This document shows positions 20,222-54,713 of a stretch of DNA of 64,000 bases, piece by piece. The stretch comes from Girardia tigrina. Its lineage: Eukaryota. The stretch covers positions 16,024 through 80,023 of the forward strand of contig MQRK01225945.1 in assembly GCA_001938485.1 (NCBI GenBank), read 5' to 3'. The notes beneath the pieces were generated by a model that had not been told where the DNA came from, ran no database searches, and saw only the letters and a program-made list of their open reading frames with translations. The position numbers and the translations under genes are program-made. Each line of letters opens with the position of its first letter. Position 1 is the stretch's first letter.

Positions 20222-22013
20222 GGTAACGAGACAATTCGACACAATTTTTTTAATTCGACACATTTATCAATTCGACATATTTTTCATTCGACACAGTAAA
20301 AGTTAATTTTTAACATTTTATTCATTGCAAATTAGCTATCCAACGCAAGTATTTCAGTTTCAAAAAATATGTATTTGATATGATAAATATGTAGTTAATA
20401 TAAAAATATCAATTTCATATGAAAACTATCAATTTTTATAGTATTAAAAATAAAATATTTGTTTAATTATTTATATTATGTAGAGTTTTTCAAATTGTTA
20501 AATACGATAGATCTGTTCACTATGGAATTCACTACTACTCAGAGAGGTCATTTGGTTCTAATTTATCTAGGGTTTAAGTACTCTAAATTTCACACTAATA
20601 ATTGAGTCATAATTTGGAGATGCAGGCAGAATCAAAGTACAAGATGTCATGCTTTCCTTAAGACAGCTGACAACCATAATACCATTGTGCGCCTTCCATG
20701 TAATCATTCACATGATTCCTGCCCTCAGAAGATTGTGGCAAACATTGCTCAAAATAAAAACAAGGTTGCCATGAAGGAAGTAGGTGCCACTACCCGAAAT
20801 GTGATTGACCATGCATTTTGAAGCTTGAGCTTGGACATTCTTGGTTATATGCCTAATAAATCATCAATTGTTAGAACCTTGCATAGACAGAAACAGACTG
20901 ATCATATTCCAAATTCAACTGCACCTGACTTTGGAATTCCAGACAAATATCATATACTAGTTTTGAATGATTCCGGGACTAATGATCCTAACAGAGTTTT
21001 GGCATTTGGTGATAGACACCTGTTACTTAAACTTTGCAATTTATGGTGATGGAACATTTGACAAGTCACCTGACATATTTTATCAGCTTTATACTTGGCA
21101 TTCTCAAATAGGCACATCATATCCACCTTACATTTACTTTCTTTTTCAAATAAAAGGCTACAGAAACTTATCACACGTTGTTTCAAATTCTTAAATAACT
21201 ACTGCCGCAGTTGTCACCATATGTTGATTTTGAAAAGGCATGCATGAATGCATCAAAAGTCACATTTCCCGATGTAGATGTTAGAGGTTGCTACTTTCAC
21301 CTCTGTCAAATTCTTATCAGAAAAATCAACACTGTTGGATTAAAGAATGAATATGAAAGCAACATTGACATCAAACTTAGGCTAAAATCACTTTATGCCT
21401 TGGCTTTTGTGTCTGATACTGATGTCAGGAATGTTTTTGATAATCTTGCAGCAACATTCCCTGATGAGGATGGGTAAAATGAAATTCTCACATATTTCTT
21501 ATCAACTTATATTGAGGGTGCTCTTGGTAGAGCTCCTCAGTTTTCAATAAGATTCTGGAACCATTTCGATTCTGCTGGTGAGCAAACACCAAAAACTACA
21601 AATTGTTGCGAAGGTTTCCACAATGCTCTTAATGCCATATTTCAATGCAGTCACCCCAGAATTTTGAACTTGCTTGATGGACTTGGAAGAGATATAGCTT
21701 GTCACAGACTGACTTTGGCAAATGCTCTCTAAGGTAGTTCAGAGGTTGTAAAGAAAAAATATGTATCATTGAGTAAGGCTATTGCAATGGCTGTGCAAGA
21801 TTACAATTTGAATACATCGAATGTTGATAAACTGAAGTACTTGCGTCGGCTAGGTAATTTGCTATCAATAAAATGTTAAAAATTTACTTTTACTGAGTCG
21901 AATGAAAAATGTATCGAATGAAAAATATGTCGAATTAACAAATTTGTCGAATTAAAAAAATTGTGTCGAATTATCTTGTGTCGAATTGTCTTGTGTCGAA
22001 TTTTCATGGAACC
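20222..22013 (+). mobile_element. Mutator-like (MULE) element with disrupted FLYWCH-MULE transposase
   Basis: GGT...ACC termini with TIRs built of repeated TTCGACAC motifs and a 9-bp TSD ATTACAGTT/ATTACAGTC. The transposase starts at ATG 20522: WRC..C..HSH zinc finger, DGTFDKSPDIFYQLYTWH, DFEKAC, GCYFHLCQ, KTTNCCEGFHN. It carries stops and frameshifts. Confidence 0.95.
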
Positions 22014-26217: not shown

Positions 26218-26978
26218 ATTACTGAACATATTTTGAATTTTATGAAATCGTGATATCTCTCTCCCAATAACTGTCAAAATTCTTACACAGAATTTTGAAA
26301 TTATCAATATTAACATCTGCTATCTGAAATGGAAATGGTTTGTTAATAAGAGGAAGTGATGATTTTGTGGAAAGCTCACTGACTAGTATAAAAGTGCCTT
26401 TTTCGACCTAGACAGATGTAATCAGTGCTTTGAAAATGATTAGTACCCCACTTTTCAGTTCACTTTTTTACACTTATAATTAAATATTTTCGTCATTATT
26501 TTGATTTGGAAAGATAGTAAATCCAAAATTTTCGCTAAAATTTAAATTAATTAATTGGATAATATTTATTTAGATTGGTAGTATCAATTTTGTAAAATAC
26601 ATTTGGTAAATTTATAACTTAATTTTATTACAAAAATTTCGGCTTTATTCTTGACAATAATTATTTTGAAAAACAAATTATCCTTAATATAATAAATTGA
26701 GATTTAAATGAGGCAAATAACATCAATTATTAAAATGATATTAATTTGTCAAAAATCGCTGTTTAGAAAGTCAACTTCCAGTGCCAAAAACGATCTTTAT
26801 TTCAGATTTATGTTGAATAAAACGAATAATGGTAAAAGAGATTTTTTTATTAATTGCAAAATATAATTTGTAGCTTTATTTATTTAATTGAAAAAATATT
26901 TTAAATTAACAACACAAAATGATTGAATAATTACCAAATAAATATAAAAAAATTACCAAATTTAAATAATACCTTACG

Positions 26979-28415
26979 AAAATACATACCGCATTTGGAA
27001 TACCTTTAAGACCCCTTTTATGGATGATTAGAACGTCTCAATATATGGTAGCGAAATATCTAGATTCACGATTAAAACCTCTATTATCATCTGAATTTTT
27101 GTGTCGTGACAGTTTTGAATTTGTTGATTTCATTTCTACTTATAAAGTACAGAATGAAGGTGAATTTATGATTTCTTTTGACATCTCTAGTTTATTTACA
27201 AATGTTCCTTTGGTTGAAACTTTGAATTTGTGTTGTGATCGATGGAAAAATAATCATTCAGAACATCATATTGTCGACGAGGTTGGGTTTCGAGAGTTAT
27301 TAAGTTTTGCAACATCAAATGTTCATTTTCTTTTTAATAATGAGTGGTATAAGCAAACTGATGGTGTTGCTATGGGTTCACCGTTAGCACCAACGTTAGC
27401 TTCTGTTTTTCTTTCAAAGATTGAAAATAAAATAAAATTGTTTGATGGAAATCAACCTTTAGTATATAAACGATAAGTTAATGATATATTTCTAGTTTTT
27501 AAAAATCAGGCTGATGTACTTCCATTTGTAAATTTTATGAATTCGTTACATTCAAATGTTACTTTTACAGTTGAAAATGAAAGGAATGGAGTCTTATCTT
27601 TTCTGGATCTTTAGGTTGAAAGAAAATCTCTTAGCTATGAGACTGGAATTTATAGGAAGCAAACTGATACATGTTTATATACTTCACCGGACAGTTTTTG
27701 TGAACTTAAGTATAAATTAAACATGATTAAAGGTTTAATTTATCGCTCCTGGTCTTCCACTTTTGTTAAATCTGTAGAAAGTGTTAATAAACTAAGTTTG
27801 TTGTTAAATCAGAATGGTTATTAAAAATCTTTTCTAGAAAAATTAATAAAGGAAACAGTAGATAAAATACTTTTGAAAGATTTTTCGAAAAATCAGAGTT
27901 TGGCTTCTCCTGACGGATCTAAGAAAGAAATCAAAGGATCATTAGATATTAATAATATGTCTAAATATTGTTTAATTGTATCTTATTCGGAAGGATTTAA
28001 AATCTTTAAAAATGATTTGTTAAAAGCAACTAACAATGAATTAAATTTAAAAATTATATCACGATCTCATAAAATTCAAAATATGTTCAGTAATAAATCT
28101 GTTACACTATTAAAACTTTGTTCTGATATTGTTTATGAATATAAATGTAATGGGTGCGATGCCACATACATTGGAGAGACTGCCCGTCATCTCTGTAAAC
28201 GAATTCAAGAACATGGTCGAGAAGAGAGTAAGAGTAATATTGCAGAACATAGGAAAAAATGTAAATGTGATGTTAATATTGATAATTTCAAAATTCTGTG
28301 TGAGCATTTTGACGGTTATTGGGAGAGAGATATCACGATTTCATAAAATTCAAAATATGTTTAGTAATAAATCTACTACACCTTTAATACTTTGTTCTGA
28401 TATTGTTTATGAATA
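26979..28415 (+). mobile_element. Penelope-like retroelement (RT + GIY-YIG), 5'-truncated and inactivated
   Basis: IPLRP, SFDISSLFTNVP, QTDGVAMGSPLAP, YKR*VNDIF (YVDD disrupted), LSFLDL and IYRK. Endonuclease IVYEYKCNGCDATYIGETARHLCKRIQEH. The 3' end carries an internal duplication. Confidence 0.95.
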
Positions 28416-28631
28416 TTCCTTCATGTCAAACTTATCGCAATGTGTTTTATAAAAATATAATTAATAATCCTTCCTTTAAGGTTATTCTAGAAATACAAAA
28501 TTGTAAGATAATACTTAAAAAATCAAAATTATGTATTATGTTTCTTAAATTATTTAAAATTTACAATAAAAAATCAAAACTATATGTTAGGTTTTAGGTT
28601 TTTATTATTGACCATATTAAAATTTAAAGTA

Positions 28632-29003: not shown

Positions 29004-29905
29004 AGTAAAACAATCCAAAATAAGTTTTTTTTAAAAATAAATTATCGAGTAATATTTGTTTCTTTACTCAAACCCCTTTCTTAATATAAATAAGTATACT
29101 ATAATAATTATATGAATATTTTAAAATTCCTAATTTTAAATTTATATTTTAATTTTTAAGTATATTTAGCAATTTACGTTTTATATTATATATAAATATA
29201 TAGATTTAATATTTATTTAAAAATGTATAAGTAGTACTAAATTCATTCAATATATGTCAAATCTTTGGGTTCTAAGATTAATCTGCAAATGTGTCTCTCG
29301 GCAACTTTATTGAGTGTGTTTAGATGACATAATCAATTAATGATTATATAAGCACTGTTGGCATATTATCGGTTATAATAACGGTTATACCGTCAAAATT
29401 AATTGTCAATAAAAAAGGTGTATGTTTTTAATAAAAAAGTTCATTATTTTTGAAATTATTTGTTTATTCCTAAAAAAGGAAGTATTTTGTTTAAAGCTAT
29501 TAATAACTTATTGAATCGTTTAAAGTTTAAAAGTAAATAATTGTTCAAAATTTTATTTATTGTTATCACAAATACAAAGAAAGAAATTCTGAAGATTGTT
29601 ATAATCTTTATGTCACTTTTTCATGTTTTAGGTCTTTTGATCCTCCAAGGTAAAGTTTTTAAACTCTGATCTGTTTTACTTATAAAAAATTTTCAGTTCT
29701 CATAAACATGATATGTTAGAATGGTTCAGATATGTTACAAGGTCACACCAATAAATCTGTGGATATTATTCGTTTTGTGTGTTAATATAATATACAAAAC
29801 AAAAGGTGTATAAACTTGAAATTTAAGGCGTTAAATAATTTAAATACATCAAGATACTAATATTGTTATTTGATATTTAATAAAAAGGCCTTAATTTTAA
29901 AAATA

Positions 29906-31099: not shown

Positions 31100-31510
31100 C
31101 AAAATATATTTGATAACTAAAACAAATCATCAAATTGCAAGAATTATTAACGAAATACTTGGAACTATATTAAAATAAATACATAAATATTGGAGGTTAA
31201 GAAAAAAGTTTTTATTCGCATAAATTCTCATGAGTTTCTTTTTAAAAAGCTGACAAAAATGTATTTAAATTTATTAAACTTTATAAAAAGAGAGGGAAGA
31301 CATGTGGAACATTATAAATAAGATCTTCGTTTCCTAAAATTAACGATCAAAATATAATCTCGACAACTATTAAAAATGTTTGAATGACGAAATGACAAAA
31401 TTTCGCTCGCATAATAATTAACTGCAATATATATTTTCAACAATCAGTTTTCTAGAGATGACGATTAATCCGTCGAAATGAATAAACATAAATGTCTTAT
31501 TTGACTTGTT
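31100..31510 (+). mobile_element. Highly decayed Penelope 3' end with degenerate hammerhead
   Basis: TCGTL*IRSSFPKINDQ resembles the endonuclease C-terminus. It is followed by CTAGAGATGACGATTAATCCGTCGAAAT (31452-31479), homologous to 42228. Confidence 0.55.
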
Positions 31511-32611
31511 AATTTTGATTTCAATCAACTACCGATTTGTCTAAAATTAGTTTACAAGTCAGAAGACTTTAAAAATAAGCTTTTTAAAATTAAGGTAGGT
31601 GGCCGTTCAATAGATATGCAAACTATGTTACCAGGGAGGCTTTGAAGTGATGTTGAACTACCGTCAACGCTATAATTTCACACTATTATTTGACAAACTA
31701 TGTTATTTCACAGGCAAAGTGACAAAACCAAAAACGTCACAGAGCACAGATAAAAAAAGATAAAATTTTTTTAATAGCTTCACTATTTTATAATTTCACA
31801 GTTTTAAAAACATAACTTCCGTCAAAATAGTTTTTACTATTAAAAAAAATGCATGTTTTGAAATAATTCAATTTTAAATTCTGAAAAGTAAATGAGTTTA
31901 TTAATTGTCATTAATTTATTTTTCAATTTAGGGAAACTAATAGCCCAACACTCCAAATATGAAAACTTTTAACAAAAATCTTTGTTCCTCTAAATAATAC
32001 TTCAAAAATTCAACCACAAAATGCGGTTATTATAGCATCATTCAATAAAAAATACAAAACATTTCTTTTATAAAATGGTTCTATGAAAATTACAAGCTTA
32101 ACAAAAATGCTACAAAAATAAACCTTCTTTAATCAATAAGATTTGTGATAAAGGCTTCGGAAAGATCAGAGAAACTATGATAAAAATATATTGGGATAAT
32201 TTACGATAAAGAATCTTGTACCATGAACAAGGATACTTTAAATTATTATGAATGTAATTCAATAATTTACGGGTTGGGTATTTCATAATCAATGACATTT
32301 GAATAATATATTTCAATGGAAACAGAAACTGATGAAGTGAAGAAGAATGAAGTGAAACATTTAGATAAAATTCAGAACCAAATATTAACTGAAAGATCCA
32401 AAAACCTGAAACAAACTTCCATCTTGAGCATTCTTAACCACTGAAAAAATAATGTTCAATAATTTTTTAGTTTTGAAATTTTTTTTATTTAGTAATCCTT
32501 TAATAATTTTTTTTTAAAAATTGTAATAAAAAAATAATGAAAAAAATAATGAAAAAAAGTTCTTCAATGGTTAAAGTCCCGAACAATTGCTGGTCTAATG
32601 TTTGTGCTTAG

Positions 32612-32708
32612 TGTGAGGAATATTTGGTGTGTGGATGTTTTTGTGTAGTTTTTGTATGTTTAAATGTTGCATGTTGATTTGGGATTGTGCCTCTCCTAAC
32701 CAGATGGA
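32612..32708 (+). repeat. Two-box dispersed repeat, copy 3 of 7
   Basis: TGTGAGGAATATTT...GGATTGTGCCTCTCCTAACCAGATGG. Confidence 0.8.
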
Positions 32709-34636
32709 TTGTCAATATTTAATTTTTANNNNNNNNNNNNNNNNNNNNNNNNNNNNNNNNNNNNNNNNNNNNNNNNNNNNNNNNNNNNNNNNNNNNNNNN
32801 NNNNNNNNNNNNNNNNNNNNNNNNNNNNNNNNNNNNNNNNNNNNNNNNNNNNNNNNNNNNNNNNNNNNNNNNNNNNNNNNNNNNNNNNNNNNNAAGTAAA
32901 TATTTTTAAATAAAATATTTTTCTCAAGTTAGTTCAGATTATAATGAGAGATATTGAAAAATTGATTGATGGAATCTAGTGAAAGCCTTACTGTTGATCA
33001 TCATAAAGATGACAAAAATTGTGAATATAATAAATGTTCTGACAAATGTGTGAGTTCTCTTAACACTTAGAATGAATGATGAGAACTTTTGCGGAATTTA
33101 ATGTAAAAAGTGAATTTAAGACTGATACTAAACCAATAAAATACGAGACCATGATGGTGGTGGTTATCAAAACTTTGTAAAATCCCAGAGGAAATTTATT
33201 AAATGTTGATGTCTATTTATGGAGGAAACGCATTCAAGAAAACAATCTTTTTCAAGGAAATCAAGGGTTTCAGTAAATATTGTGAATACTGCAAGAATTA
33301 TGTGAGACCAGGACGACCATGGATCTCCACTTTCGATAAATTTCTCACTGAAAGGAAATGAATGCTTCCTTTTCAAGCTTTTGAGGTATCTTTCACATTC
33401 TGTGCTACCAAACTTTTGTAATTCAATTAATGACATCTGAATCACAACCATACGTACGATCTTTTAAACCAAAGCGCCGGTTCCATCATAAAAAATAATT
33501 TATTAATCTCTTAAATATAAAATATCGATTTATCTCACCATATTAAACGTAGTTAAATCTTTGAAGATGTTGTTGGCATTTCAAGTTAAGAGCATCATCA
33601 TACTATAGCTTGAAACTAAATAGAAATAACCTAAAATATATTATACAAAGGATTTTACATAATGAAGTTACCGACTTTGACTGGTGATTTATTTAGAATT
33701 TATTTACTATTAAATTTATTCAATAATTTTCTAAGTATAATTGTCAAAAAGTTTTCTTCGTTTTAATGTTTTCCAAATATTTTGGAATAATTTTAAATAT
33801 ATTAGAAAATCATGCTGGAAAAATATATAGAGAGACAACGGTTTAAAATGGATCAAAAGAATAACATCTTGAAAATTATAACACAAATAATCAAGTTACA
33901 ACATTCTGAAGGATATAGAGCATTTAGAAAGTCTCACAGTAACCAAAAACGGTTTGTGAATATAGAGTTAATTTGATATGTAAATTTAATTGTTACGGGT
34001 ATCGAAAATCAAATATTGCGAAATATATAACCTTCAATGTACACGTACTTAATGGTTTTTCATAATAATTGTACAAAAATGCACTCAAGAAAATTCGATG
34101 GACCAGATGGAGATAACTCCATCAATCTGAGAGATGCCAAAACCATTTTTTTGCCAAAAAGTGTATTTAGTTCTATGAATAACAGAAACGGAATTGGGAT
34201 TAGTGGGCAAAACTAACATAAGTGGCATAACTTAAATTAAACTTAAAAGTTAAAGAGCTCAAGGAACGCATAATACGAGAAAGAATTTACGTTGATGAAG
34301 GAAATACTATAGTGCTTATCCTAAAATGCAAAAGTCGTGTTTAAGATATTATTGCTTGAACTGCCTCAGTGTGCTATAAAATAGGTAGAACATAAATAAT
34401 TAGAGACACATGAGACGAACGAGATGAAAATTGAAGAAAATGTACGAAGTTCATTTAAAAAGGAAATAAATTTCTAAGAAAAATTATTTTAATTTGAATA
34501 TCGATTTTAACTTTATTTTATTAAAATTTCTTTAATTAGACGTAAATTTTCAGACTAGAATTTTTAAAAAAAATTTCTGTAAATTTTATTCATATATCTT
34601 AATTCATATACCAAAGGATGACTGCAATCAGAATTA

Positions 34637-35957
34637 TTAACATGGCAAGAAAGTTTTTTCCGTTACTCTCCACTTCTAAATAAGAAAGAAAATTGCCATT
34701 CTAATGCTATGTTTTTGTTAATTCATGTTTATAAATATTTTTTGGCAAAAAAATCAATCGATATATATATATATATATTAATTTGTTTCATATGATCACT
34801 TTTCATATTGGATTTAAAAGGTTGTCGGTAAAAATAGAGTTTTCAATATCTAACAGTCGATTCTATGCATACGTTGAGTGGAACGACTGCATCTGAAACC
34901 TATAGAAAGTTGTTCAGTGCCTTCCCTGATGATTTCCCAACGGAACGCACAATAAGAAACTGGTTCTCTGATTTTACCTCAGGCAAGTGGCTATCGTTGG
35001 ACGATCACCCACGAAGTGGACGTCCTTCAGCAACAACAACTGATGATTTGATTGAAAAAGTTAGGAACATAATTGAACAGGATGAAAGAATGTCTTTAAG
35101 ACACATAAGTGAAATGCTTGATGTCAACAAAGAATTAATAAGGACAATCCTCCACGAAAATTTGAACAGGAAAAAGATTTTGAGCATCTGGGTGCCTTAT
35201 CAACTGACTGATGATCACAAATGACAACGTATTGAATCCTCAAGAAATTCTTTGCAACTTGTGCAACAATACTTGATGAAACGATGGATAACAGTTGATG
35301 AAATATGGATATCATTTTCCCCTACATTATGGAGATCCGACTTACGAGTATGGGCAAGTGGAGATGATCCTCGACCACGTGCTGTTCAAAACAAAAAATT
35401 TGGACGAAGAACAATGCTTATTTGGGCATTCACAGCTGATGGTAAGTTTCACATCGAAGTAACCAAATCTGGCGAGGCTATCAATTCTGAAAGATATACA
35501 GATTCATTCAAAATAGTCTTACGAAGTTTAGTAAAGACAAACGACGAGTGAAAATGCGAGAAATTCTTTGGCAGCATGATAATGCTCGACCACATTCATC
35601 CAAGTTTACCACAAAGTTTTTTTCAGAAAAACATGTTGAATTGATTAAACAAGCTCCATATTCGCCTGATTTAAATCAGTGTGAGAAATGACTATTCCAA
35701 TTTTTAAAAGGATCACTAAGAACAGCATCATTTGCAAGTGAGGAAGAGGTCGTACAAGCGGTCAGTGATATTATGAGGAATCTCTCACGAGAAAAACTTT
35801 CAAATGAATTTGATAAACTTTTTACACATGCTGAAAATGTTATTTGTTGTAATGGTGAATATACTGTTGTGTAGAAATATATATTTGTTGTTTTATATTT
35901 GTTTTATTTAGAAATTAGAAATACAGAGGAGTAACGGAAAAAACTTTGCCATATTAA
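34637..35957 (+). mobile_element. Full-length mariner-like element with disrupted transposase
   Basis: TIRs TTAACATGGCAAGAAAGTTTTTTCCGTTACTC / GAGTAACGGAAAAAACTTTGCCATATTAA with TA flanks. Motifs PRSGRP, IWVPYQLT, ITVDEIW, WQHDNARPH and APYSPDLNQCE. In-frame TGA at 35222 and a frameshift near 35510. Confidence 0.95.
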
Positions 35958-36923
35958 TATTAAAAGAATGGATTGCCAATGAAGCATTTGATCAAGGATA
36001 TTGAGGCTATAACTGCTTAAATATCAAAGTAGATATTGGATGAAATGGAAACATTCCTGCTAACAGGCATGAAAGTGAAAGAGACATTTTATTTCCCAAC
36101 CCTAACTTAAATTTATATTATTAAAGTCTGAAACCCTCATTTAAAGCACAACTAATAGGGCATATGTATTAGTCTACTTCCAACAGTGCTAGATCCAACA
36201 GTTACCGACGTCATTCAAACAGTCTCAAATGTCACTCAAACTAAATCAAAATATAAATAAATTATTTTCTTAAATTCTAGACTATTACTATTGAAAATTT
36301 AATTTATATATTATTTATAAAATATAACAGAAAATTATTCAATTAAATAAATTGAAAATATGTGACACATTACAACATTAATTAATATTGTTGAATAATT
36401 GGTTTTTTATTATTTCTAATTATGTTTCTTCGACAATTCTATTTATAAGTTGATAGTAAATAATTTATGTTAAATTATTCATAGTTCCATTTTCTTCACA
36501 TGAATTTTCATATTAAATTATTTATTTAATATTATTTTATATAATTTTCTCACTTGAAATTCATTGGAAATTCTGGAAATTTATTTTTTTGTTTCGGTGA
36601 AAATATTTGAATTTATTTTCACACAGATTTACCGATAAAAAATAAAGTGGAAAGATATATTATTTATTAAATGACAAATTATATTTTTTTTAAAAAAATA
36701 ATGGGGGCGGAAAAATACATTTTTAATGAGAAAATATTTGCAAATCATAATCCACGAATTTTATTATTTTTTAAAATATCTGTTTCTAAAAAAATTTAAT
36801 AAAAAGCAGTAGATAAAATTAATATTTTTATAACAATAATGAATATCAAGAAGAGCGTTGAAATGTTAATAGAAGAAACATGTGGTTGATGGCATTCGGT
36901 TTTTCGATGTTGTTCGGGATTCA

Positions 36924-36964
<41 letters not shown>

Positions 36965-37084
36965 TTATTCTTATCTATATCGAATTCCATACCTATTCTT
37001 GTCGCCATCCCGAATCAATCGAAACAATTGAATCTCAGACAACTTTGATTCGTTTTAGAATATGTAAATAATTGATATGGATAA

Positions 37085-37783
37085 AAATAAACGCTTTATG
37101 ATGCATTTTCGTTGTAAATGTGATTACTTTTTTAATCGAATCATCACTTGTGAGGAAACATTGATCAAATATAATAATTTTAAACGTTCAGTAAGCTAGG
37201 TGGACACGAATGAAGCATTAAAACACAGTACAAATCACTTCATTCATCAAAAGAAGCTCATGGTAAGTGTTTGGTGATCTGCTGCAGGTGTGACTTCAAT
37301 TATGACTTCAAAAAAGCCTGGTTTCTCGATCACAACAGATGTCTACTGCAACCAATTAAAAGATATAATGCTGAAACTCAAAACAAAAACAGCCGCGTTT
37401 GATGAATAGGTCTCTTGAATGACTCTTATCTTGCTAACAACAATGCAAAACCACATACTGCAATGAAGATCTTGACAGTACTACAGGAACTTAATTTGTA
37501 ACTTCTGCATCATCCTCCATTCTCACGAACACCTAATCATAACTGATTAACTTTTCTTCTTCAATTTCAACAACTCTTTGTTAGGAAAAAAATTTAAATT
37601 CTGAAGATGCCATAAAAATGATCTAATGTTTATTCTAATAGCTTCAAGAAACTGCTTCAAATTGCACAAGTGTGTCGAAAATTTGGGTGCATACTTTAAT
37701 GAATGATATAAATATTTGTATTTGTAGATTAGCAATAAACTTTGACTTTATTTATTTACAAATTTCATAGTTGAAGACATGAT
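37085..37783 (+). mobile_element. Decayed cecropia-subfamily mariner, 3' half
   Basis: RIITCEETLIKYNNFKRS, HQKKLMVSVW*SAAGV, DVYCNQL, NNAKPHTA and LHHPPFS. TIR-like end ATTTCATAGTTGAAGACATGATA. Confidence 0.8.
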
Positions 37784-38054
37784 ACATCTTTGTGATTAAT
37801 AATTGTGTTAATTAACTTATAGCTTATCACTTCGCATGATACGCTGTTTTAAATGATCTTCAAAGATACTGTTTTTTATCTGTAAGATGTACTAATTTTG
37901 CAATTTTGTAAAACTTACTCCTTTATCTATAAGAATCAAATAACTAATATTTCAGAACTGTGAAAATTGAATAGTCAGACTGCATATAATTATCGAATGT
38001 CAACTCACTTGAACAAACGATAAATTACCCCTGAATTTATAACTTGAAATATGA

Positions 38055-38495
38055 AACAACTTATTTTTTGAAAACAAATAAACGTCATTTAAAAATATAT
38101 TTTATGATAATATATTTCGACGGTTTAAAAACACAGTCCAAAAAGGGAAAAGAGTAATATTGCTGAGCATAAAAAAAACGTGTAAATGTAATATGAGCAT
38201 AAATGATTTTAAGATTTTGTGCAAGCATTTTAAAAATTATTGGGAGAGTGTCATGTGAAGCATTGTTGATAAGATCATGTGATCCTAAAATCAATGTTTA
38301 AACAGCACTCTCAACTAATTTGTTAAGAATTTTCGATTACACTTACGCAAGTGATTGCATAATCATTCATTTCTTATATAAAATCAATAAAAAGAACATA
38401 ATCAGCGATCTGATGATGACGGTTAAACCGTCGCAATATATTATCATAAGATATATTTTTAAATGGCATTTATTTGTTTATAATAAAAACTTGCC
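38055..38495 (+). mobile_element. Penelope 3' fragment with pLTR and inverted partial pLTR at its 5' end
   Basis: Interrupted frame AEH..TCKCNMSINDFKILCKHFKNYWE..CEALLIRSCDPKINV. 38060-38125 is the reverse complement of 38425-38490. Confidence 0.9.
38405..38445 (+). ncRNA. Minimal type I hammerhead ribozyme motif (GAAA box mutated to GCAA)
   Basis: GAT-CTGATGA-T-GACGG-TTAAA-CCGTC-GCAA-TATATT-ATC. Confidence 0.7.
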
Positions 38496-38778
38496 ATCTT
38501 TTTTCAAGTTTATTTGTACTAACTTATTTTTTATAATTATTTAGAAAATATGTGGTCGTATTAAATTTTTTTCAATTAAAATCTTATTAACGTTTATTTT
38601 TAAAAATTTCAACTATAAACTTATTTCAAAAATATGTTTTAATTATAAAAATTCTTCTGAATAAAATACTGACTTTAAATATTTTAGATGTTTTTAATTT
38701 TCAAATATTCAAAAAAATGCAAATAATTAATAGTTAAAAAATTAATAACAAAACTCATCCATTTAAAAATATATTTTA

Positions 38779-38820
38779 AAACAATATATTTCGACGGATC
38801 TACCGTCATCTTCAGGTCAC
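38779..38820 (-). ncRNA. Minimal type I hammerhead ribozyme motif with intact core
   Basis: Minus strand GAC-CTGAAGA-T-GACGG-TAGAT-CCGTC-GAAA-TATATT-GTT, inside a solo pLTR-like segment (about 38760-38870). Confidence 0.8.
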
Positions 38821-39429
38821 TAATTAATAATCAATTCACCTGTATATAAATACAAAAATGATGATTATCGTTAAAAAATTAATCGTTTTTTTCAGCATTT
38901 CTAATAATTATTATTAAAATCATTTTTGAAGTTCGTCTGTTCATTTTTGATTTTTCTTTTAATTAATTACAGAAAGAATATTATATAAAAATAAAATGAT
39001 CTTATGATATCTAAAACAAATATTTAATTTTTGCCAAAATAGAAATAATTATTATATTGTTTTAGAAATTTGTGAAATTGAAATATAATAATTTAATTAT
39101 TGTATGACAAATTGTTTTTTTTCCATGGATGGATTTTTTTAAAAGACATTTAATTTTATAATATAATTATGTTTTATTTTAAGAAAAATTCATTAGAAAA
39201 TAACAACATTAATTTTTTAAAGAATTTTTACAAATAAATAGCTAAATCGTTAATTGGTTATTTTTGCATTTATTTTATTATTATATTTACTAAATATTAG
39301 GTCTAAAAATTATTTTAATTTTAAAATAAATATTATGTCTTCTGCAAAGAATAAATACATAATAAAAATTAGATAAACTTAAAGTTTCTCGAAAAAATAT
39401 TTATATGTATTATATGTATTAAAATTATA

Positions 39430-39548
39430 CAGGGGCGGCCATAAGTCGCTTTACAATAAGTCGCCATCAACATCTGCAGTTCGTGCAAGTTTGCAGTTGC
39501 ATATACCACGCACAAGTTTACTGGGTAAAGCGACTTATGGCCACCCTG
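39430..39548. mobile_element. Tc1/mariner-type MITE (119 bp)
   Basis: TA|CAGGGGCGGCCATAAGTCGCTTTAC ... GTAAAGCGACTTATGGCCACCCTG|TA. Confidence 0.9.
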
Positions 39549-41339
39549 TATGTTCTTAAACAGGAAACTAAAGTGATCGAAGGGGTTTTTAAGATTTATG
39601 TCTTTAATTTAATATTTAAAATGAGAAAAAAGAGTATAGAAGTACGCATAAAAAGATTTTAATGTTGTATATTTTGAAGTCATGTGATCAGTATTGGTCT
39701 ATTTATATTTTTTAACTGGTTTAATATGTAAAAAGATACTTACGATAAGGATAAGATCTCCAGGAATTTGACCATTGTACCTTTTGTACATATAAAACGG
39801 TTCTTAAGTATATAAATTTAATGTAAAATTCATGTTTCAATTAAGTTAATTTTATCAGAAAATTTAGTCAATAACCTTTTAAATATACTGTACTTAGATT
39901 TATATTATAATTTATTATGTAAATTTGAAATAACAAATTGACCTCCTATCTTATTTTAATAAAAAAATCTTAATCGAATCTCATTTTGATAGATTTTAAT
40001 AATTTAGAATGTCATTTTACGAATATCAGACCGATCCCAATTATTTTTTTCTAAATATTCAATACAAAAAAACCATATTAAATTTTTTTGGACTTTAGCA
40101 GTTGGGTCGAGGGTGCACCTAATTATTTTCAAGACTAAACTTTTTATTTTTTTTCATTTTTGGCTTGGTTTTATAATATTTTTGAGAGTGTCAGTAGGCT
40201 AGTAACCACATATAGATGGATGTTGGCTCCAATTAACTCATCCACCGTTTACCATGTTTTGGTTTTCATCCTGTTGGGTGTTCACACACCCTCGTCACAC
40301 TGGTTGCTCTGGATGAGGGAGCTGGTTTAGTTGCCTACTAGTCTACCATGGAAAATGAAGTGCATGTTTACATTGTATCTATTGCTGGCATGCTTATCGT
40401 GTCAGATCTGAATAGTCAATGGCCCCATAAATTCCTATCGGTCAACCACATAAGTAAAAACGTGGTTGTTGGGTGTCAACTTGGAAAATAGTATGGGATC
40501 CATCCATTGACTATTAAAATTTAATACGAGGCAATAATCGCCAAATACAGTAATACAAGATTGTATAGAGAAAAATCATTATTTTTTAAGTACATAATCG
40601 TAATCAACAATCTTTTGTTCAAATAATAAAGGTATCAATTCAAAATCTTTTAAAACAAATTTTCTAAACGATACTAATGCAACTGACAAACTATCTTTTC
40701 AAAATGGAAATACAGACCAAAAATCTTTCAACAATGTGACAAATTTAATCTTTCGATAATTAGTGACAAATAAATCTTTTTCAACATTTTGTCTTTTTGA
40801 CGAAAATTCAAAATAAAATTTGAATCACAAAAGAGAGAGAGAATTGCCGATCTCAAACCGATAATCATAAATTAAATTGGCTAACAAAAAATAATATTTC
40901 AAAAAATGTTCAATTGAAAAAATCACTCATTTAAATTTCAAAAGCCAAAAAAACATTCAAGAACCGTGAAATTGAAATTGCGATAAATGTAAATCACAAT
41001 CGAGCTAACAACTCGCTCTGATTGGTCAGCCAAACAGATAATCACAGCAATAAATTATCAGAGATTGTCATTCAGATATGGATCATATATGATTTTAGAT
41101 TTTAATTTGAGTTTGAAGGCGGACTATAAATAATTATAATTTTGATATAATTGTGAGAAGTGGTTGCAACGTCTATATCCGAATTCATTTTTTTAAACAC
41201 CAAAATTTTATTATGATTTTCATTTATTATATAATTTTTAATTTTTAAAAATATTTAACAAGCAAATTAATATAAAAATATTTTACCCTTTAAATTAAAA
41301 AATAATAAACTATTCAGGCGAGATAAAAATTAAAATTAA

Positions 41340-41763
41340 CCCCTCATAATAATAAAATATAAAATTTAAATTTTGAACACCTCTCATTTTCACTGATATT
41401 TTTTATTGCTTGAAAAAGTGACAATTTTTACTCCAGTCACGCATACAAAGTTAAAAAAATAACTTTTCCGTGTTAAGTAATTTTTATTTAATTAAACGAT
41501 TTAAATAAATGAGATTCAATTTTCTCTCCTATTGAGTTGATAGGAAAGTTTTTGTGCTTCTTATGAATGCTAATTTATTTTAAAAATTTCAACAAAAGTT
41601 TATGAATTCAGATTTGTGTTTTAAGAACCTTTCGGATTATCTAATTTATTAAAATATCACTTTTATTGCTGAGCTCGCACTCACCAAGGATGTTTGCACA
41701 AAAAGAAATTTTTTATCATAATTTATAATTTGCACTCTTATTTTATTCCACTTCAAGACAGGG
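41340..41763. mobile_element. Possible old piggyBac-type MITE
   Basis: TTAA|CCC ... GGG|TTAA termini with weak AT-rich inverted similarity. Confidence 0.35.
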
Positions 41764-41999
41764 TTAATTACCACAGAATTAACTCGTCCCATAGCTAATG
41801 ATAATACAATCGGCGAAGTCGCACGGCAACCGCGATTTGGTGCTGGCAGGGGTTCCCTGGATCATGGAAAATAGATTTGGGAAGACCATCTTTTTTTGCA
41901 TAAATTGCCTTCTTTTAAGCTTAAATACATTAAACTTTTGTAACACCAGAGAAATAAAATTTATTTTCTCTGTCAGAAAATTAACTTCAGAATTTATTT

Positions 42000-42400
42000 C
42001 AATAGACGAAATAAATCATTTTAAAGTTTTATGTAGCAATTTTAAAAATTATTGGGAAAGAGTCTTACGTGAGTCATTAATAATTAAAGCTGTTAATACA
42101 GCAATTAATGTACAATCAAGTTACTCATCAACTTTATTGAAAGTTTTTGCGTGAAATAGAAATTACACAATTGGTTGCACAATCATCATTTTAAATATAT
42201 TAGCTTCACAGCTACAATCAGAATCGCCTGATGATGACGAATATTCCGTCGAAATATATTGCTCTAATAAGAAAATTGTATTTTAAAATGGCGTCTTCTA
42301 ATTTTTATTGAATTAAATATTCTCATAAAACGATCTCTTAAAATTCCAAATATGTTGAGTAATAAATCTGTTACACCTTTAACACATTGTTCTGAGATTG

Positions 42401-42443
<43 letters not shown>

Positions 42444-42470: not shown

Positions 42471-42770
42471 AATCAATGTTCAATCGACAGTCTCAAATAG
42501 CTTATTGAAAATTTTGATTAGCATGATTTCACGCAATGGATTATACAATCATTATTTTGGCATTTATACAGGTTAATTAAATTATCAATCAGTGATCAGT
42601 CGAAATATTGTTGATCAATCAACATATATTGTCATTTAATATATATTTTTAGTGGATAAATTTTGTTGTAAATAAATAATAAATTTATTTATTACATATA
42701 AATTATTGTATAAAACAATTATTTTGAAATGTGATTATAAGAATTTTAAGATACTTTTTTTTAATTTCAG

Positions 42771-43115
42771 GTTAGTATTTTTGATAGGGACAGCGAAGAT
42801 ATTAACGGAAAAATAAAATGTTATGAACCAGACAATATGAAAAACAAACAAATTGTATCATTTATACCAAATTTAAACAATTACCTCCAATATACAATAA
42901 AACTTATGCTGAAACTGGATAGAGATGTAAAAGGAGGAGATTCACAATATGCGTTATTTATTTGTGAGGATAATGGGATTCCGATGAAGCTGACCGCCAC
43001 TTGTACTGTGACCATTAATGTTCTGGACAGAAACGATAATTATCCTATTTTTTCCGAATTCCCCAAAAATATTTTAGTAAAAGAAAACACTTCACCTCAA
43101 ACAAGTATTTATAAT
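42771..43115 (+). CDS. Protocadherin-like cadherin, internal exon A
   Basis: TTTCAG acceptor and GTAAGT donor, 115 codons. VSIFDRDSEDINGKIKC...LDRD...CEDNGIP..LT...VLDRNDNYPIF..VKENTS contains the cadherin DxD, LDRE and DxNDN motifs. Confidence 0.93.
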
Positions 43116-43815
43116 GTAAGTAGAAACTGATTTTCTAAATATTTGTCTGAGTAAGAAATCGTATTTTAAAAAAGTTATTTTTTAAGTTGAAAAATAATGT
43201 TTCTTTGGATATTTTATTTATTGATGACATTCTTGTTTCAGATACAATATTTTGAATACATTACTGATTTTATTTCAAATTTTAATCTTAATCTATGGAA
43301 GTCATCGAAAAAATGCATTTATGACTGTAAATTAATGTATATGTTTGAATAGAGTTGTGGCCATATGTGCATGGCATATGGAATGTAGTTGCACTCTCAT
43401 CCCATGTCATACTTCATTCTTAAGTACACCAAATAATATATAATGGAAATATAATCATAAAGAATTTGAAAATTTAGGTATAAAATTCAAAAATAATAAT
43501 TATGAACCAAACGGTTTTATTTTAGTTCTATTGGGATACATTTAAGCAGAGCCTATGAAAACCAAAAAAAAACATTTGCATTTAAAAATAAAAACAGAAT
43601 CAATTTTAAGTAGGGCAGGTGTACAAAGTATAACGTTTCCTTCATAAAAAGTACTGGAAACTACGAAAAATAGTTCCAACATGTATTTTGACACAGTCTT
43701 TACTTTTATATTAAGAGTTTCTCTATTAAGTTTATAATTCTACGTTATACTTTGAAAAAAAATTGTTATTTTCATTGGAAACATTTTGCTTCATTAATTT
43801 TCCTGAGACTCTTAA

Positions 43816-44044: not shown

Positions 44045-44199
44045 TTAACGAATAGATCTTTAAAGGAATCGTTTTTATCTAATGATTAATATTTTATTTA
44101 ATTGTTCTATTAAAAGCTAAAAAAAATATTTTTACTATAAATTGTCCGAAAATTACAAGTTTAAAATAATTGTGATTAATTAATACATTTTGCTTTCAG

Positions 44200-44355
44200 T
44201 TTGAAGCTACTGACAAAGATAAGGATTTCAATGCCAAAATTAAATATAGTATTATGAAGAATACGACAGATGAAGATTGCTGCGTTATCGACGAAGATTC
44301 AGGGAGTTTGTTTTCCTTGAAACCTTTAGACCGAGAAAAAAGAGACCATTATCAG
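44200..44355 (+). CDS. Protocadherin-like cadherin, internal exon B (not in the ORF track)
   Basis: TTTCAG acceptor and GTAAAC donor. FEATDKDKDFNAKIKYSIMKNTTDEDCCVIDEDSGSLFSLKPLDREKRDHYQ joins exons A and C in frame. Confidence 0.93.
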
Positions 44356-45065
44356 GTAAACCATCGATAATTAAATTTATAAATTAATAATTATTATAAT
44401 AAAAATGATGATAATTTTAAACCCTAAACATATATTACATTATTATTATCAAGTATCCAGAAAAAATCTTTAGCTTACAAAACATTTTATTCACGAAACT
44501 TTCAGATATAAATTAATAGAACTATGAATAGTGTAATGTGAGTCTTTCTTCAATTTTTTTATTTTTTTATTACTTGAGATTGTATCGAATTATTATCTAC
44601 CTTTGTTGTGATATTTTTTAGTTTTTTTTATTGTCAGTGTTTTTTTGTATTTTATGATTCGTTTAATAATTTGCAGTTATTGTTTTACTTTATTCATTGG
44701 ATTTGCGAAAATTTCCGTTGTATCTTTAAAAAAATCAAATAGAAACTCAAAAATTCGTTTCTAATAATTAAAAAATCATGACTCAAAAAAGAACATAGTA
44801 ATATGGGATATTTGAATTTTGATTTTAAAAAAATCAATACACAAATTAATATATTATTTATGGTTATGACTTACCTCTTGAAATGTTTATTTTCTTTGGG
44901 TGCGTTTTTTTCGTTGTTTTTTTCTTTGTTTTTTAATTGTATTTGCTAAACGAAAGCTGACTAACTGCAATCGACTCCATACGACTACCCATTTCGAAGC
45001 TTTATTTATCTAAAGACTATAATCTTTTCTGACGATTCCTTCCAAACCGATCGCCAAATCGTAAC

Positions 45066-47199: not shown

Positions 47200-47740
47200 A
47201 AATAAGCACGATAAAACAACAAACAAAATGACGTGAATTACAAAAACTTTTTAAAAAAGCAGAAGTATTATTGATGATATTCAAATCTTTGTAAATGGAG
47301 AAAATTTGTAAAGAAGGGGTATTGTCTATTTGGAAGTACAGCTTGAGGTTATTAAAGTAAACACAGACCAGCTTATAACGACCATAACATCCATTCGTCA
47401 CCAAAATTCTGTGCTTAATTTTTAAAACCTTTTCATCTGATATTTAAAGGGACTTCGCCTTTACCAGAACATATCTCATTATTTGATAGAACAGGTTTTT
47501 TAATATTCAAAATAAAACGATATATAATTTTCAATCAAATTAACATATATTGGAAACTTTATTAACACAAACAGAACAAATACCAAACACCAAGAATTAT
47601 TTTCACAACAAACAAAGCTTCCAGATATTTCACGAACAAATCCAAAACCCCGTTAGGAATTAAGGCCAACATAATTTACCAATTTACATATCACAAGTGC
47701 CAAGCCTTGTACATGGGAGAAACAACCCGTCCTCTCCAAA
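47200..47740 (+). mobile_element. Decayed, internally deleted Penelope-like RT/GIY-YIG fragment
   Basis: IIDDIQIF (YVDD-like) and PRIIFTTNKASRYFTNKSKTPLGIKANIIYQFTYHKCQALYMGETTRPL. Confidence 0.8.
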
Positions 47741-53058: not shown

Positions 53059-54713
53059 GATAATATTAATCTTGTACCATTAATTAATGTTAATATTTGA
53101 ATATAGACATAAAAATCATATTAATCCAGAATGACGACTCCCGCAGAAATTGATAGTGAAAATGTTTGTGTTGTTAATAAATGTTTATACTCAAGTTGTG
53201 ATGTTGCTAATAATTGCCATTATGGGAGTCGGTTTAATAATGAATGAAATGACTCGCTCTCATTGGCCGACAAATCAGATACAGTTTGACATGCTCGAAT
53301 TGTTTTGTGTCTGGCAAATTTAAAATGAATGATTTGCAAATTGTTGAATTATTTGCAATTTATTGTCGAGTTAATATAGTCGAATTTAGTTGAACTTGAC
53401 AATTTATTAACGATTTTGATTGAAAAAATTGTGTCTCTAATATTTTTGAAACGAAAATTTATTGAGTTATTTTGAAAACAAATATTGTGTTTTTAAGAGA
53501 ATTTTTACGAATTGAAAATATTTTCTAAGTTGACGAATTACGAGTGCATTTTCCAAATTTTTGATATAGTATAATTTATTTTGACAGAAATTTCTTACTT
53601 TGATTCATGAAGAAGTTAAAAAGAGAAAGATATAAATGATGATCATTCTAAATAGTATAAAATAGGACCAGCAAGAAATGCCAAAGCTTAACGTTTCTAC
53701 GACTCCCGTTCAATCTTCTGAACTACCAGCAGCTCGGATGGAACAATTCCTATTGTGAATTGTCCAAAGTGAAAATTTTGTTTACTATTACGTTATAATT
53801 GATAAACAGTGACAATAAAAGATGAATTCGGATATAAATAGATTGATAAAATTAAAAAAAATAATTAAAAATTATAAAATAAATCATTCAAAAATGAAAC
53901 ATATATTCGTTTCCCTTCTTCAAATTTTCCTTATTTCATTTTGGATATTTGAAGAAGAAATCCGACGACAAAGGAATCCTTCCCTCAGATTTTAGAAGTA
54001 ACAGTTTTCTTTTTTGTGTTATCCTTCTTGTATCGAATTTCCATAAATTTTAATTAGTTTTAAAAATATTTTGATTTTAATTAATTAAGTAAAAAGTAAA
54101 ACTATACTCGAAAATTGCGGATTAAGTTTTGTTTTGAACATTGTTTAGCCTCAAAACTTCACATTTCTTTTAAAGTATTAAATAACATTTCATAAATTCT
54201 ATTGAAAAATTGTTTTTGTAAATTATTTTCTTTACCATTGCTTTTTTTTACTTTTTTCAAAAGTAAAAAAAAGCCCGCTGCACCAGTTGAATGGTTTACA
54301 TCTAAACCCCGCAGTTTGGTGCAGCGTAAAATTTAAAATCCAAAACATTGGTTCATCAGGAGTTCGTATGAGACAGATTGGCAACGTTCAATGAATCCAC
54401 CAGATCTTGTACCATCTGCATTCCCCTGTCAAACGGTCAATGCAAAATTTCCTCTAATTATGATTATTGAAATTTCTGGTCAATTAAAGGGTTCTAATTT
54501 TGTAATTAAAAATATTTAAATCATTTTATTTCAAATAAATATTGTATTTGTTCACAATTGTTTTATAAAAATTTTAAAGTTGTGGGAGGGACTTGACCAC
54601 ATCCACAGTAGTTTTGAAAGTTAGTTGCATCTGTTTAAAGTGCTATGACCATGAAATATAATACATAAAGTTTAATTTATTTCATAATATTAAATTTATT
54701 TTTCATTTTTCAG

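What the first reader, a model, noticed from the sequence alone, without database searches (positions are those of the whole stretch)
31452..42265. Family of minimal hammerhead ribozymes at Penelope 3' ends, with conserved stem II and variable loops
Seen: the motif CTGA(T/A)GA-T-GACG(G)-loop-(C)CGTC-GAAA-TATATT occurs at 38410(+, GAAA mutated to GCAA), 38815(-), 42228(+), degenerately at 31452(+) and partially at 38108-38125(-). The stem II pairing is kept while the loop changes (TTAAA, TAGAT, ATATT, TTAAT). Three copies lie just downstream of a GIY-YIG C-terminus. Established: Penelope-like elements carry minimal type I hammerheads in their pLTRs, with a palindromic stem III that is thought to cleave as a dimer. 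Inference: this family has an all-AT palindromic stem III (ATATAT), a predicted AUU cleavage triplet and a very short stem I, which is an unusual variant. The 42228 copy is sense to the cadherin pre-mRNA, about 510 nt upstream of exon A, so it could cut the intron co-transcriptionally.
Basis: partly seen in the sequence, partly recalled or inferred. Interest (0 to 1): 0.8.

Follow-up and report, generated by a model that had tools for sequence, protein, structure and literature searches.

The report
Penelope retrotransposon minimal hammerhead ribozymes
The repeated motif is the known minimal hammerhead ribozyme of Penelope-like retrotransposons, present in over 13,000 copies in this genome; the window's copies are broken relics, and the motif also holds the element's start codon.

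Summary
The motif CTGANGA-T-GACG(G)-loop-(C)CGTC-GAAA sits at 38410(+), 38815(-) and 42228(+). A degenerate copy lies at 31442-31494(+) and a 5'-truncated copy at 38041-38128(-). I add a decayed copy at 29364-29414(+).

Genome-wide there are 13,401 exact matches, against 0 for the reversed control. The motif starts about 70 nt after the stop of an ORF that scores as reverse transcriptase plus GIY-YIG endonuclease, so these are Penelope-like elements (PLEs).

Between subfamilies, helix I (3 bp), helix II and the palindromic helix III change by compensatory substitutions. Every feature matches the metazoan PLE "min-HHR" of Cervera & de la Peña 2014, including the extra base between A9 and G10.1. 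It is therefore a new member of a known kind, not an unusual variant. Rfam's hammerhead models miss it.

New detail: the extra U makes an AUG (A9-U-G10.1) that opens the PLE ORF, with a TATA box 32-38 nt upstream. The predicted cut falls 27 nt into the ORF, as reported for the Anolis Poseidon element PAc.

Genomic 5' ends do not pile up at the cut site. A cut in the cadherin intron is unlikely. The scan's first readers noted the same motif in seven other windows of this genome.

The parts
38400..38452 (+). Hammerhead copy, subfamily A. Helix I 5' strand GAT 38407-38409; core CTGATGA 38410-38416; extra T 38417; helix II 38418-38432; 'GCAA' 38433-38436 with A13 changed to C at 38434; palindrome to 38441; U17 38442; predicted cut 38442|38443; helix I 3' strand ATC 38443-38445. 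The core is mutated, so it is presumed inactive.
   Evidence: 67.8 bits
38773..38825 (-). Hammerhead copy, subfamily B, with an intact core (CUGAAGA...GAAA). Helix I is GAC/GUU. U17 is at 38783, so the predicted cut on the minus strand is 38783|38782. The element is 5'-truncated about 60 nt upstream of the motif and has the short 3' end.
   Evidence: (68.5 bits)
42218..42270 (+). Hammerhead copy, subfamily F, with an intact core. Helix II has 4 bp plus an A.C mismatch. Helix I has only 2 bp (GC/GC). U17 is at 42260, predicted cut 42260|42261. It is on the same strand as the cadherin exon that starts 510 nt downstream.
   Evidence: 57.8 bits
31442..31494 (+). Degenerate hammerhead copy. It has CUAGAGA for CUGANGA and a broken helix III palindrome, and no PLE coding remnant was detected upstream.
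   Evidence: (41.7 bits)
29364..29414 (+).
   Evidence: 19.3 bits, E 0.026
38041..38128 (-). Inverted, 5'-truncated PLE copy. It starts inside loop II of the hammerhead, has the short 3' end, and lies head-to-head with the 38118-38516(+) copy.
   Evidence: same arrangement in L031, L037, L042, L045 and L078
38118..38337 (+). Remnant of the GIY-YIG endonuclease C-terminus (residues 441-514 of the L042 ORF), with internal stops.
   Evidence: E 7e-24
38375..38381 (+). TATATAA box 35 nt upstream of C3. The matching boxes of the other copies are at 42196-42202(+) and 38843-38848(-).
38463..38497 (+). 3' hairpin: arms ATGGCA 38463-38468 and TGCCAT 38492-38497. The long-form end of the element lies near 38516.
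42011..42148 (+). Remnant of the GIY-YIG endonuclease C-terminus upstream of the 42228 hammerhead.
   Evidence: E 2e-9
42547..42673 (+). Further PLE 3' fragment in which the CUGANGA box and helix II are deleted. It follows a (TA)n run at about 42405-42443.
26973..28328 (+). Large PLE fragment covering reverse transcriptase through endonuclease (residues 41-484, 59% identity to the L042 ORF).
   Evidence: RVT_1; E 6e-176
42771..43127 (+). Cadherin-repeat exon (motifs DRDSEDINGK and DRNDNYP), preceded by a splice-acceptor-like ...tttcag. More cadherin exons lie at 44176-44367 and 54669-55046.
32729..32893 (.). Assembly gap. It is not part of any motif copy.

Best explanation
Identity. The motif is the minimal type I hammerhead ribozyme (min-HHR) carried by Penelope-like retrotransposons. 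In this genome the PLEs are short elements whose single ORF encodes reverse transcriptase plus a GIY-YIG endonuclease.

Layout (shown). A compact module follows the stop codon: a TATA box, then about 30 nt later the ribozyme. The base inserted between A9 and G10.1 is always U, so A9-U-G10.1 reads AUG. An ORF runs from that AUG through helix II, the cleavage site and a downstream hairpin into the element's N-terminal coding region. The '3'-end' motif of one unit is therefore the promoter-proximal start of the next unit in a head-to-tail or pseudo-LTR arrangement.

Mechanism (inferred from other PLEs, not shown here). Only helix II is stable. Helix I (2-5 bp) and the 6-nt A/U palindrome of helix III are too weak for a monomer. 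Cleavage after U/C/A17 would therefore need two RNAs paired through the palindrome, or the element's own protein, as reported for the Anolis element PAc. A cut would separate the 5' end and the AUG from the rest of the ORF.

Window copies (shown). All are 5'-truncated or decayed insertions. One has a core mutation (A13C), two have intact cores but no partner and no ORF, and two are degenerate. They are best read as relics with no host function.
For: - Chance is excluded. The window has 3 exact matches against 0.00 expected. The genome has 6,684 + 6,717 matches against 0 for the reversed control.
- PLE link. L042:2530-4074 scores RVT_1 (3e-11) and GIY-YIG (7e-5). The hammerhead starts 70 nt after the stop in L042 and L045, and sits at a matching position in most loci fetched with the endonuclease. 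That endonuclease region gave 35,251 first-look candidates. The divergent G subfamily also has an endonuclease C-terminus upstream.
- Structure. In 34 copies, 90.7% of cells are paired, against 24-59% when partners are slid by 1-3 columns. The covariation score is 0.421 against 0.141 in shuffles (0 of 500 reach it). Helix I pairs change UA/CG/GC, AU/GC/UA and GC/UA. Pair 15.3:16.3 is AU in 20 and UA in 14, which keeps the palindrome.
- Subfamily G has helix II GAUGU/ACAUC, helix I AUUG/CAAU and a GUC triplet. Its encoded peptide is unrelated (MMYVNIEICP against MTVKPSKYI). The RNA fold is kept, not the peptide.
- CUGA lies upstream of the AUG and is the same in every copy fetched.
- ORF start. 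L070 reads 127 open codons from the AUG in the core to a GTAAGT. Frame 0 is open for 24 codons in 34 of 60 distinct copies, against 0 and 9 in the other frames.
- TATA[AT]A is confined to -38..-32 in 39 upstream flanks and is seen in subfamilies A-F.
- Literature. The min-HHR features and dimer model are in PMC4209133. For PAc, the ORF begins at helix II, the cut is 26 bp after the start codon, and cleavage needs protein (PMC11167929). Inverted 5'-truncated copies and a 30-40 bp 'tail' are in PMC8557442.
Against: - No cleavage data.
- Rfam hammerhead models give no hit at gathering score, nor at E<=10 even on 121-1,406 nt inputs.
- Copies are related by descent, so the covariation rests on about 7 subfamily lineages rather than 34 independent sequences. 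Helix II was partly fixed by my search patterns. I picked L059-L061 from a list because they looked informative.
- Sporadic double changes in helix II are paired no more often than chance: 44 of 96 against about 4 of 9 combinations. CpG decay could produce the commonest ones (my tally by eye).
- Copies whose 5' end falls at the predicted cut site are rare: 40 in a 10-nt bin, and only 4 exactly at the site. There is also no pile-up at the start of the motif. Retrotransposed RNA was therefore not mainly cleaved RNA.
- MFE dimer predictions show the helix III duplex in only 1 of 8 cases.
Confidence: 0.85

Rival explanations
1. The conserved block is only the promoter-proximal 5' UTR, start codon and N-terminal coding sequence of the PLE. 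On this reading the hammerhead-like fold is incidental and the RNA never cleaves.
For: The block overlaps an ORF start and lies about 30 nt after a TATA box. Genomic 5' ends show no signature of cleavage. Rfam models do not recognise it. For PAc, cleavage was not needed for insertion in vitro and no RNA-seq ends mapped to the cut site (PMC11167929).
Against: CUGA lies upstream of the AUG, so it is non-coding, yet it is invariant while its neighbours vary. Helix I pairs non-coding bases with codon bases and covaries. Subfamily G keeps the fold with a completely different peptide. The same motif class cleaves as a dimer in Schistosoma (PMC4209133) and with protein in Anolis (PMC11167929).
Confidence: 0.1
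2. The copies belong to non-autonomous retrozymes: short tandem hammerhead repeats that make small circular RNAs. They would then not be autonomous PLE ends.
For: Animal retrozymes are proposed to derive from PLE pseudo-LTRs (bioRxiv 10.64898/2026.07.22.740005; PMC7229834). Many copies in the genome lack any ORF. An earlier first-reader note (s1-681005) describes 'mini-Penelope units' without reverse transcriptase.
Against: Most of the first 29 loci (about 1-3 kb each) hold a single motif. L014 has two on opposite strands, and L019 has two of different subfamilies 1.5 kb apart. None shows a 170-400 nt same-strand repeat. Every subfamily examined has an endonuclease C-terminus upstream. ORF-less copies are explained by 5' truncation: 35,251 candidates for the C-terminal region against 1,844 for the N-terminal region.
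Confidence: 0.04
3. The 42228(+) copy has been co-opted by the host. It would cut the cadherin pre-mRNA intron co-transcriptionally and regulate the gene.
For: It is on the same strand as the cadherin exons, 510 nt upstream of the exon at 42771, and its core is intact.
Against: Helix I has 2 bp and helix II has a mismatch. There is no intact same-strand partner nearby; the neighbour at 42547-42673 has lost its core. Single min-HHRs are inactive in vitro (PMC4209133). It is one of more than 13,000 dispersed copies. No upstream cadherin exon was found in the window.
Confidence: 0.02

Closest known systems
Metazoan PLE minimal hammerheads (min-HHR), Cervera & de la Peña 2014 (PMC4209133)
   Same: The core is CUGANGA...GAAA, with an unpaired base between A9 and G10.1 and a G10.1-C11.1 pair. 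Helix I is short with no loop 1, and helix III is small and palindromic. There are many consensus families per genome with compensatory changes. Thousands of copies are mostly orphaned by 5' truncation. Pairs occur on opposite strands 100-700 bp apart. The motif sits in the pseudo-LTR.
   Different: Helix II has 5 bp, against 7-8 bp in Schistosoma. Helix III is made only of A/U (AUAUAU or AUUAAU; AUAUGU in subfamily G). The 13,401 exact matches exceed the counts that paper gives (about 9,000 in Xenopus tropicalis).
PAc, the Poseidon PLE of Anolis carolinensis, Mob DNA 2024 (PMC11167929)
   Same: The ORF starts at the beginning of helix II, with C3 and G8 upstream of the start codon. The cut site is about 26-27 nt after the start codon. 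Copies have two 3' ends, matching internal initiation of reverse transcription and a 'tail'.
   Different: PAc is a vertebrate element and its cleavage is shown experimentally (protein-assisted). Here nothing is shown biochemically. The look-alike protein clusters are mostly arthropod. This genome shows a TATA box at a fixed distance and a hairpin that holds the short 3' end in its loop.
Drosophila virilis Penelope hammerhead variant (PMC4209133)
   Same: Helix I is very short (2 bp), helix III is small and palindromic, and there is a bulged base before helix II. An intron lies close to the motif.
   Different: D. virilis has a bulge within helix II and about 130 nearly identical copies. Here there is no bulge, and there are many diverged subfamilies.
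Rfam Hammerhead_1 (RF00163) and related hammerhead models
   Same: The catalytic core and the type I topology.
   Different: These copies lack a hairpin helix III and a long helix I with loop contacts. No Rfam hammerhead model scores them.

Membership tests
Metazoan PLE min-HHR | Catalytic core C3 U4 G5 A6 N7 G8 A9 ... G12 A13 A14 | tested here: met
   The core is intact in 38815(-), 42228(+) and the genomic copies shown in the flank table. It is broken in 38410 (A13C) and 31452.
Metazoan PLE min-HHR | One unpaired base between A9 and G10.1, and a G10.1-C11.1 pair | tested here: met
   The unpaired base is U in all 34 aligned copies, and the G-C pair is present in 34 of 34.
Metazoan PLE min-HHR | Helix II maintained by compensatory changes | tested here: met
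   GACGG/CCGUC in the main families against GAUGU/ACAUC in subfamily G. GACCG/CGGUC and GACGA/UCGUC also occur. Sporadic double changes are not informative.
Metazoan PLE min-HHR | A15.1-U16.1 pair, a palindromic 15.2-16.2 or loop 3, and H (not G) at position 17 | tested here: met
   The palindrome is AUAUAU or AUUAAU, and AUAUGU with G.U pairs in subfamily G. Position 17 is U, C or A.
Metazoan PLE min-HHR | Short open helix I that pairs the bases before C3 with the bases after position 17 | tested here: met
   Three pairs covary: UA/CG/GC, AU/GC/UA and GC/UA/AU. The 4th and 5th pairs are mostly unpaired.
Metazoan PLE min-HHR | Location in the pseudo-LTR of an element encoding reverse transcriptase plus GIY-YIG | tested here: met
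Metazoan PLE min-HHR | Site-specific self-cleavage, as a dimer or with protein | not testable with these tools
Genomic 5' ends give no support.
Rfam hammerhead families | Score at or above the gathering threshold of a hammerhead covariance model | tested here: not met
   No hammerhead hit at gathering score or at E<=10. The 2014 study likewise needed a relaxed RNAmotif descriptor to find this motif class.
Penelope-like element (EN+) | A single ORF with reverse transcriptase followed by a C-terminal GIY-YIG endonuclease | tested here: met
   RVT_1 at 3e-11 and GIY-YIG at 7e-5 in L042. An FDKGNG (DKG) motif is present in L082 and L083.
Penelope-like element (EN+) | Partial tandems (pseudo-LTR), an adjacent inverted 5'-truncated copy, and a 30-40 bp tail at one end | tested here: met
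   Head-to-tail tandem in L070, and a direct upstream pseudo-LTR in L078. Inverted pairs in L031, L037, L042, L045 and L078, and in the window at 38041-38516. Short ends at about +45 and long ends at about +80.
Metazoan retrozyme | Short (170-400 nt) head-to-tail repeats, each with a type I hammerhead and no ORF | tested here: not met
   No such arrays in the first 29 loci, which were fetched by the motif pattern alone, or in the window. This is a small sample, not a genome-wide test.

The most novel reading that the evidence does not exclude
The promoter, the ribozyme and the start codon form one fused module of about 60 nt that is shared by EN+ PLEs from lizards to arthropods. On this reading, the 'unexplained' extra base between A9 and G10.1 is conserved because it completes the AUG. 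Conditional cleavage, by dimer or assisted by the PLE protein, cuts 27 nt into the ORF. That would switch a transcript from capped mRNA to an AUG-less, 5'-OH RNA, a ribozyme-based feedback on PLE expression.
Probability: 0.3. Interest if true: 0.6.

Novelty: new member of a known kind. Interest (0 to 1): 0.33.

Why it matters
The finding adds one more genome, probably an arthropod, to the long list of animals whose PLEs carry minimal hammerheads. The copy number is very high.

What could matter beyond cataloguing is the overlap of three signals. A TATA box sits at -35. The hammerhead core has an inserted U that creates the ORF's AUG. The cleavage site lies inside the ORF. This layout was reported for a single lizard element. 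Seeing it kept across at least seven diverged subfamilies here suggests it is ancestral, and it offers a concrete reason for the conserved extra base.

For the host gene the result is reassuringly ordinary: the intronic copy is most likely inert.

Tried and rejected
- Rfam scans at gathering score and at E<=10, on 64 kb, 12 kb, 1.4 kb and 121 nt inputs, gave no hammerhead hit.
- Helix II double changes genome-wide: about 46% are paired, close to chance, and CpG decay confounds the commonest ones. I rejected this as evidence either way. Only subfamily-level changes are used.
- Test for a pile-up of 5' ends at the cut site and at the start of the motif: no hotspot.
- ViennaRNA monomer and homodimer MFE: helix II always forms, and the helix III duplex appears in only 1 of 8 dimers. 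This is uninformative for so weak a helix.
- An alternative register, with a cis hairpin as helix III and the cut moved downstream, was considered by eye. I rejected it because its helix I does not follow the G-to-A change seen in subfamily E, whereas the min-HHR register does.
- Search for an upstream cadherin exon in the window by motif regex and jackhmmer: none found, so intronic status is probable but unproven.
- 'Long open frames' of 572-661 aa in L082 and L083 run through N gaps and do not show intact ORFs.
Only a 53-position model of the motif was made.
Full report
**1. Observation**

An exact pattern finds 38410-38432(+), 38793-38815(-) and 42228-42250(+), against 0.00 expected in 100 dinucleotide shuffles. 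Two of these continue into GAAATATATT. The third, 38410, reads GCAA, which is A13 changed to C.

I built a covariance model from genomic copies and ran it unfiltered over the window. It scores:
- the three copies above at 58-69 bits;
- the degenerate copy at 31442-31494(+) at 41.7 bits;
- an unlisted decayed copy at 29364-29414(+), E 0.026;
- the truncated copy at 38099-38128(-).

The assembly gap at 32729-32893 is 1.2 kb from the nearest copy. Its flanks carry no PLE similarity. Nothing in the finding depends on continuity across it. The ORFs that cross it are read-through artefacts.

**2. Genome-wide picture**

The window's genome is 1.43 Gb in 255,254 contigs, and the window itself is 26% G+C. 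It holds 13,401 exact matches to CTGANGATGACG-N3-14-CGTCGAAA, against 0 for the reversed control.

Flanks of the first loci sort into subfamilies that differ in helix I, N7, loop II and helix III. Relaxed patterns reveal a further abundant subfamily, G, with a different helix II.

**3. Link to Penelope-like elements**

- Upstream ORFs carry the GIY-YIG signature.
- L042:2530-4074 (514 aa) scores RVT_1 and GIY-YIG in Pfam.
- The hammerhead starts 70 nt after its stop, and sits at a matching position in most loci fetched with the endonuclease region.
- That region has 35,251 first-look candidates, against 1,844 for the N-terminal region. Most copies are therefore 5'-truncated.
- Subfamilies B and G also have an endonuclease C-terminus upstream.
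- Protein look-alikes are HTH_animal/RVT_1/GIY-YIG clusters, mostly from arthropods.
- In the window, tblastn places endonuclease remnants before the 38410 and 42228 copies and a large RT-EN fragment at 26973-28328. The 38815(-) copy is truncated inside its 3' UTR.

**4. Is it a hammerhead?**

I aligned 34 distinct copies and counted the three helices of the min-HHR register.
- 90.7% of cells pair, against 24-59% when partners are slid by 1-3 columns.
- The covariation score is 0.421 against 0.141 in shuffles; 0 of 500 shuffles reach it.
- The three inner pairs of helix I change between UA/CG/GC, AU/GC/UA and GC/UA/AU.
- Pair 15.3:16.3 is AU in 20 copies and UA in 14, so the 6-nt palindrome is kept.
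- Position 17 is U, C or A, never G.
- Subfamily G has GAUGU/ACAUC for helix II, AUUG/CAAU for helix I and a GUC triplet.

Caveats:
- The copies fall into about seven lineages, so independent events are few.
- My search patterns fixed part of helix II.
- Three rows (L059-L061) were chosen by eye.
- Sporadic double changes in helix II pair no more often than chance and can arise from CpG decay.
- Rfam's hammerhead models do not score these copies. That is unsurprising for a motif that the 2014 study could only find with a relaxed RNAmotif descriptor.

Every non-imposed feature listed by Cervera & de la Peña (PMC4209133) is present: consensus families with compensatory changes, a base between A9 and G10.1, the G10.1-C11.1 pair, and a palindromic helix III.

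**5. The motif is also the ORF start**

In L070 a head-to-tail junction reads in this order: stop codon, TATATAA, hammerhead, hairpin, then coding sequence. Translation from the AUG inside CUGAUGAUG gives 127 open codons up to a GTAAGT.

The invariant AUG is A9-U-G10.1. Its U is the 'extra' base. Frame 0 stays open for 24 codons in 34 of 60 distinct copies, against 0 and 9 in the other frames. The window copies encode MTVKPSQYII... and MTVDPSKYIV....

TATA[AT]A is confined to -38..-32 from C3 in 39 upstream flanks and occurs in subfamilies A-F.

The predicted cut is 27 nt after the A of the AUG. This matches PAc of Anolis, where the ORF begins at helix II, the cut is 26 bp downstream, and cleavage needs the element's protein (PMC11167929).

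Because subfamily G keeps the fold with an unrelated peptide, coding alone does not explain the conservation.

**6. 3' ends**

Copies end either about 45 nt after GAAA or about 80 nt after it. The short end falls in the loop of a hairpin whose arms differ between subfamilies but stay complementary.

In inverted pairs, the inverted truncated copy has the short end and the main copy the long one. The window unit at 38041-38516 shows this too. This is the 'tail' of PLE insertions (PMC8557442) and fits internal initiation of reverse transcription (PMC11167929).

**7. Does it cleave?**

This is unknown.

As a genomic proxy, I asked whether copies begin at the cut site. Only 40 copies break within the 10 nt before it, spread evenly, with 4 exactly at the site (tally by eye). 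The start of the motif shows no hotspot either. L078, which carries the N-terminal coding region, begins upstream of its TATA box. The RNA that was copied was therefore mostly uncleaved, as found for PAc in vitro.

MFE folding shows that only helix II is stable. This agrees with a conditional ribozyme that depends on a dimer or on protein.

**8. The cadherin claim**

The strand and the distance are right. The exon at 42771 carries DRDSEDINGK and DRNDNYP, and further cadherin exons follow.

I found no upstream cadherin exon in the window. The site is probably intronic, because the exon begins mid-domain after a splice acceptor, but this is unproven.

The copy has a 2-bp helix I, a mismatch in helix II and no intact partner. 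An effect on the host gene is unlikely.

**9. Verdict**

The feature is real, correctly recognised, and belongs to a known class. The claim that it is an unusual variant does not hold. The AUG-in-core and TATA layout is the most interesting detail; it extends to a second, distant lineage an arrangement described for one vertebrate element. Seven first-reader notes on other windows of this genome describe the same motif.

Noticed in passing
L005 and L008 (subfamily C), about 15-55 nt after the cut site; window 38463-38497: The 3' hairpin lies inside the ORF. Between two C-type copies the arms change from UGAUGA/UCAUCA to UGACGA/UCGUCA. Both changes are synonymous (GAT to GAC, TCA to TCG), which points to selection on the RNA stem. 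The short 3' end of copies falls in the loop of this hairpin.
   Followed up: partly
L070:1937-1938 (minus strand); same site in L067, L072, L074, L078, L080: A GTAAGT follows codon 127 of the ORF that starts in the hammerhead, and coding sequence resumes about 80 nt later. This is a candidate retained intron, as known for PLEs.
   Followed up: no
window 42405-42443; also L005, L053, L054: PLE 3' fragments abut (TA)n runs. This fits the (TA)n target preference reported for some PLEs (PMC8557442).
   Followed up: no
window 2915-3232(+) and 34865-35224(+): These ORFs carry the Mos1-type HTH_48 domain, so they are mariner-like transposase fragments. L017 also shows a transposase-like ORF (not scanned against Pfam) upstream of a PLE end.
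   Followed up: no
window 21211-21477(+): A weak match to the MULE transposase domain (E 2e-4, below the curated cut-off).
   Followed up: no
L004, L007, L012, L023, L026 and many places listed: Many short contigs begin or end within about 50 nt of a hammerhead. The assembly seems to break at PLE ends, probably because of the inverted and tandem copies.
   Followed up: no
window 55835-56227(+): An ORF with a weak GPR180/TMEM145 transmembrane match (E 4e-4, below cut-off) lies between cadherin exons. It could be a chance hit or a nested gene fragment.
   Followed up: no
window 28330-28419(+), 42322-42402(+) and 47593-47736(+): Extra short PLE fragments from the stretch just before the GIY-YIG domain (residues about 392-439). 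They suggest further nested or rearranged PLE insertions.
   Followed up: no
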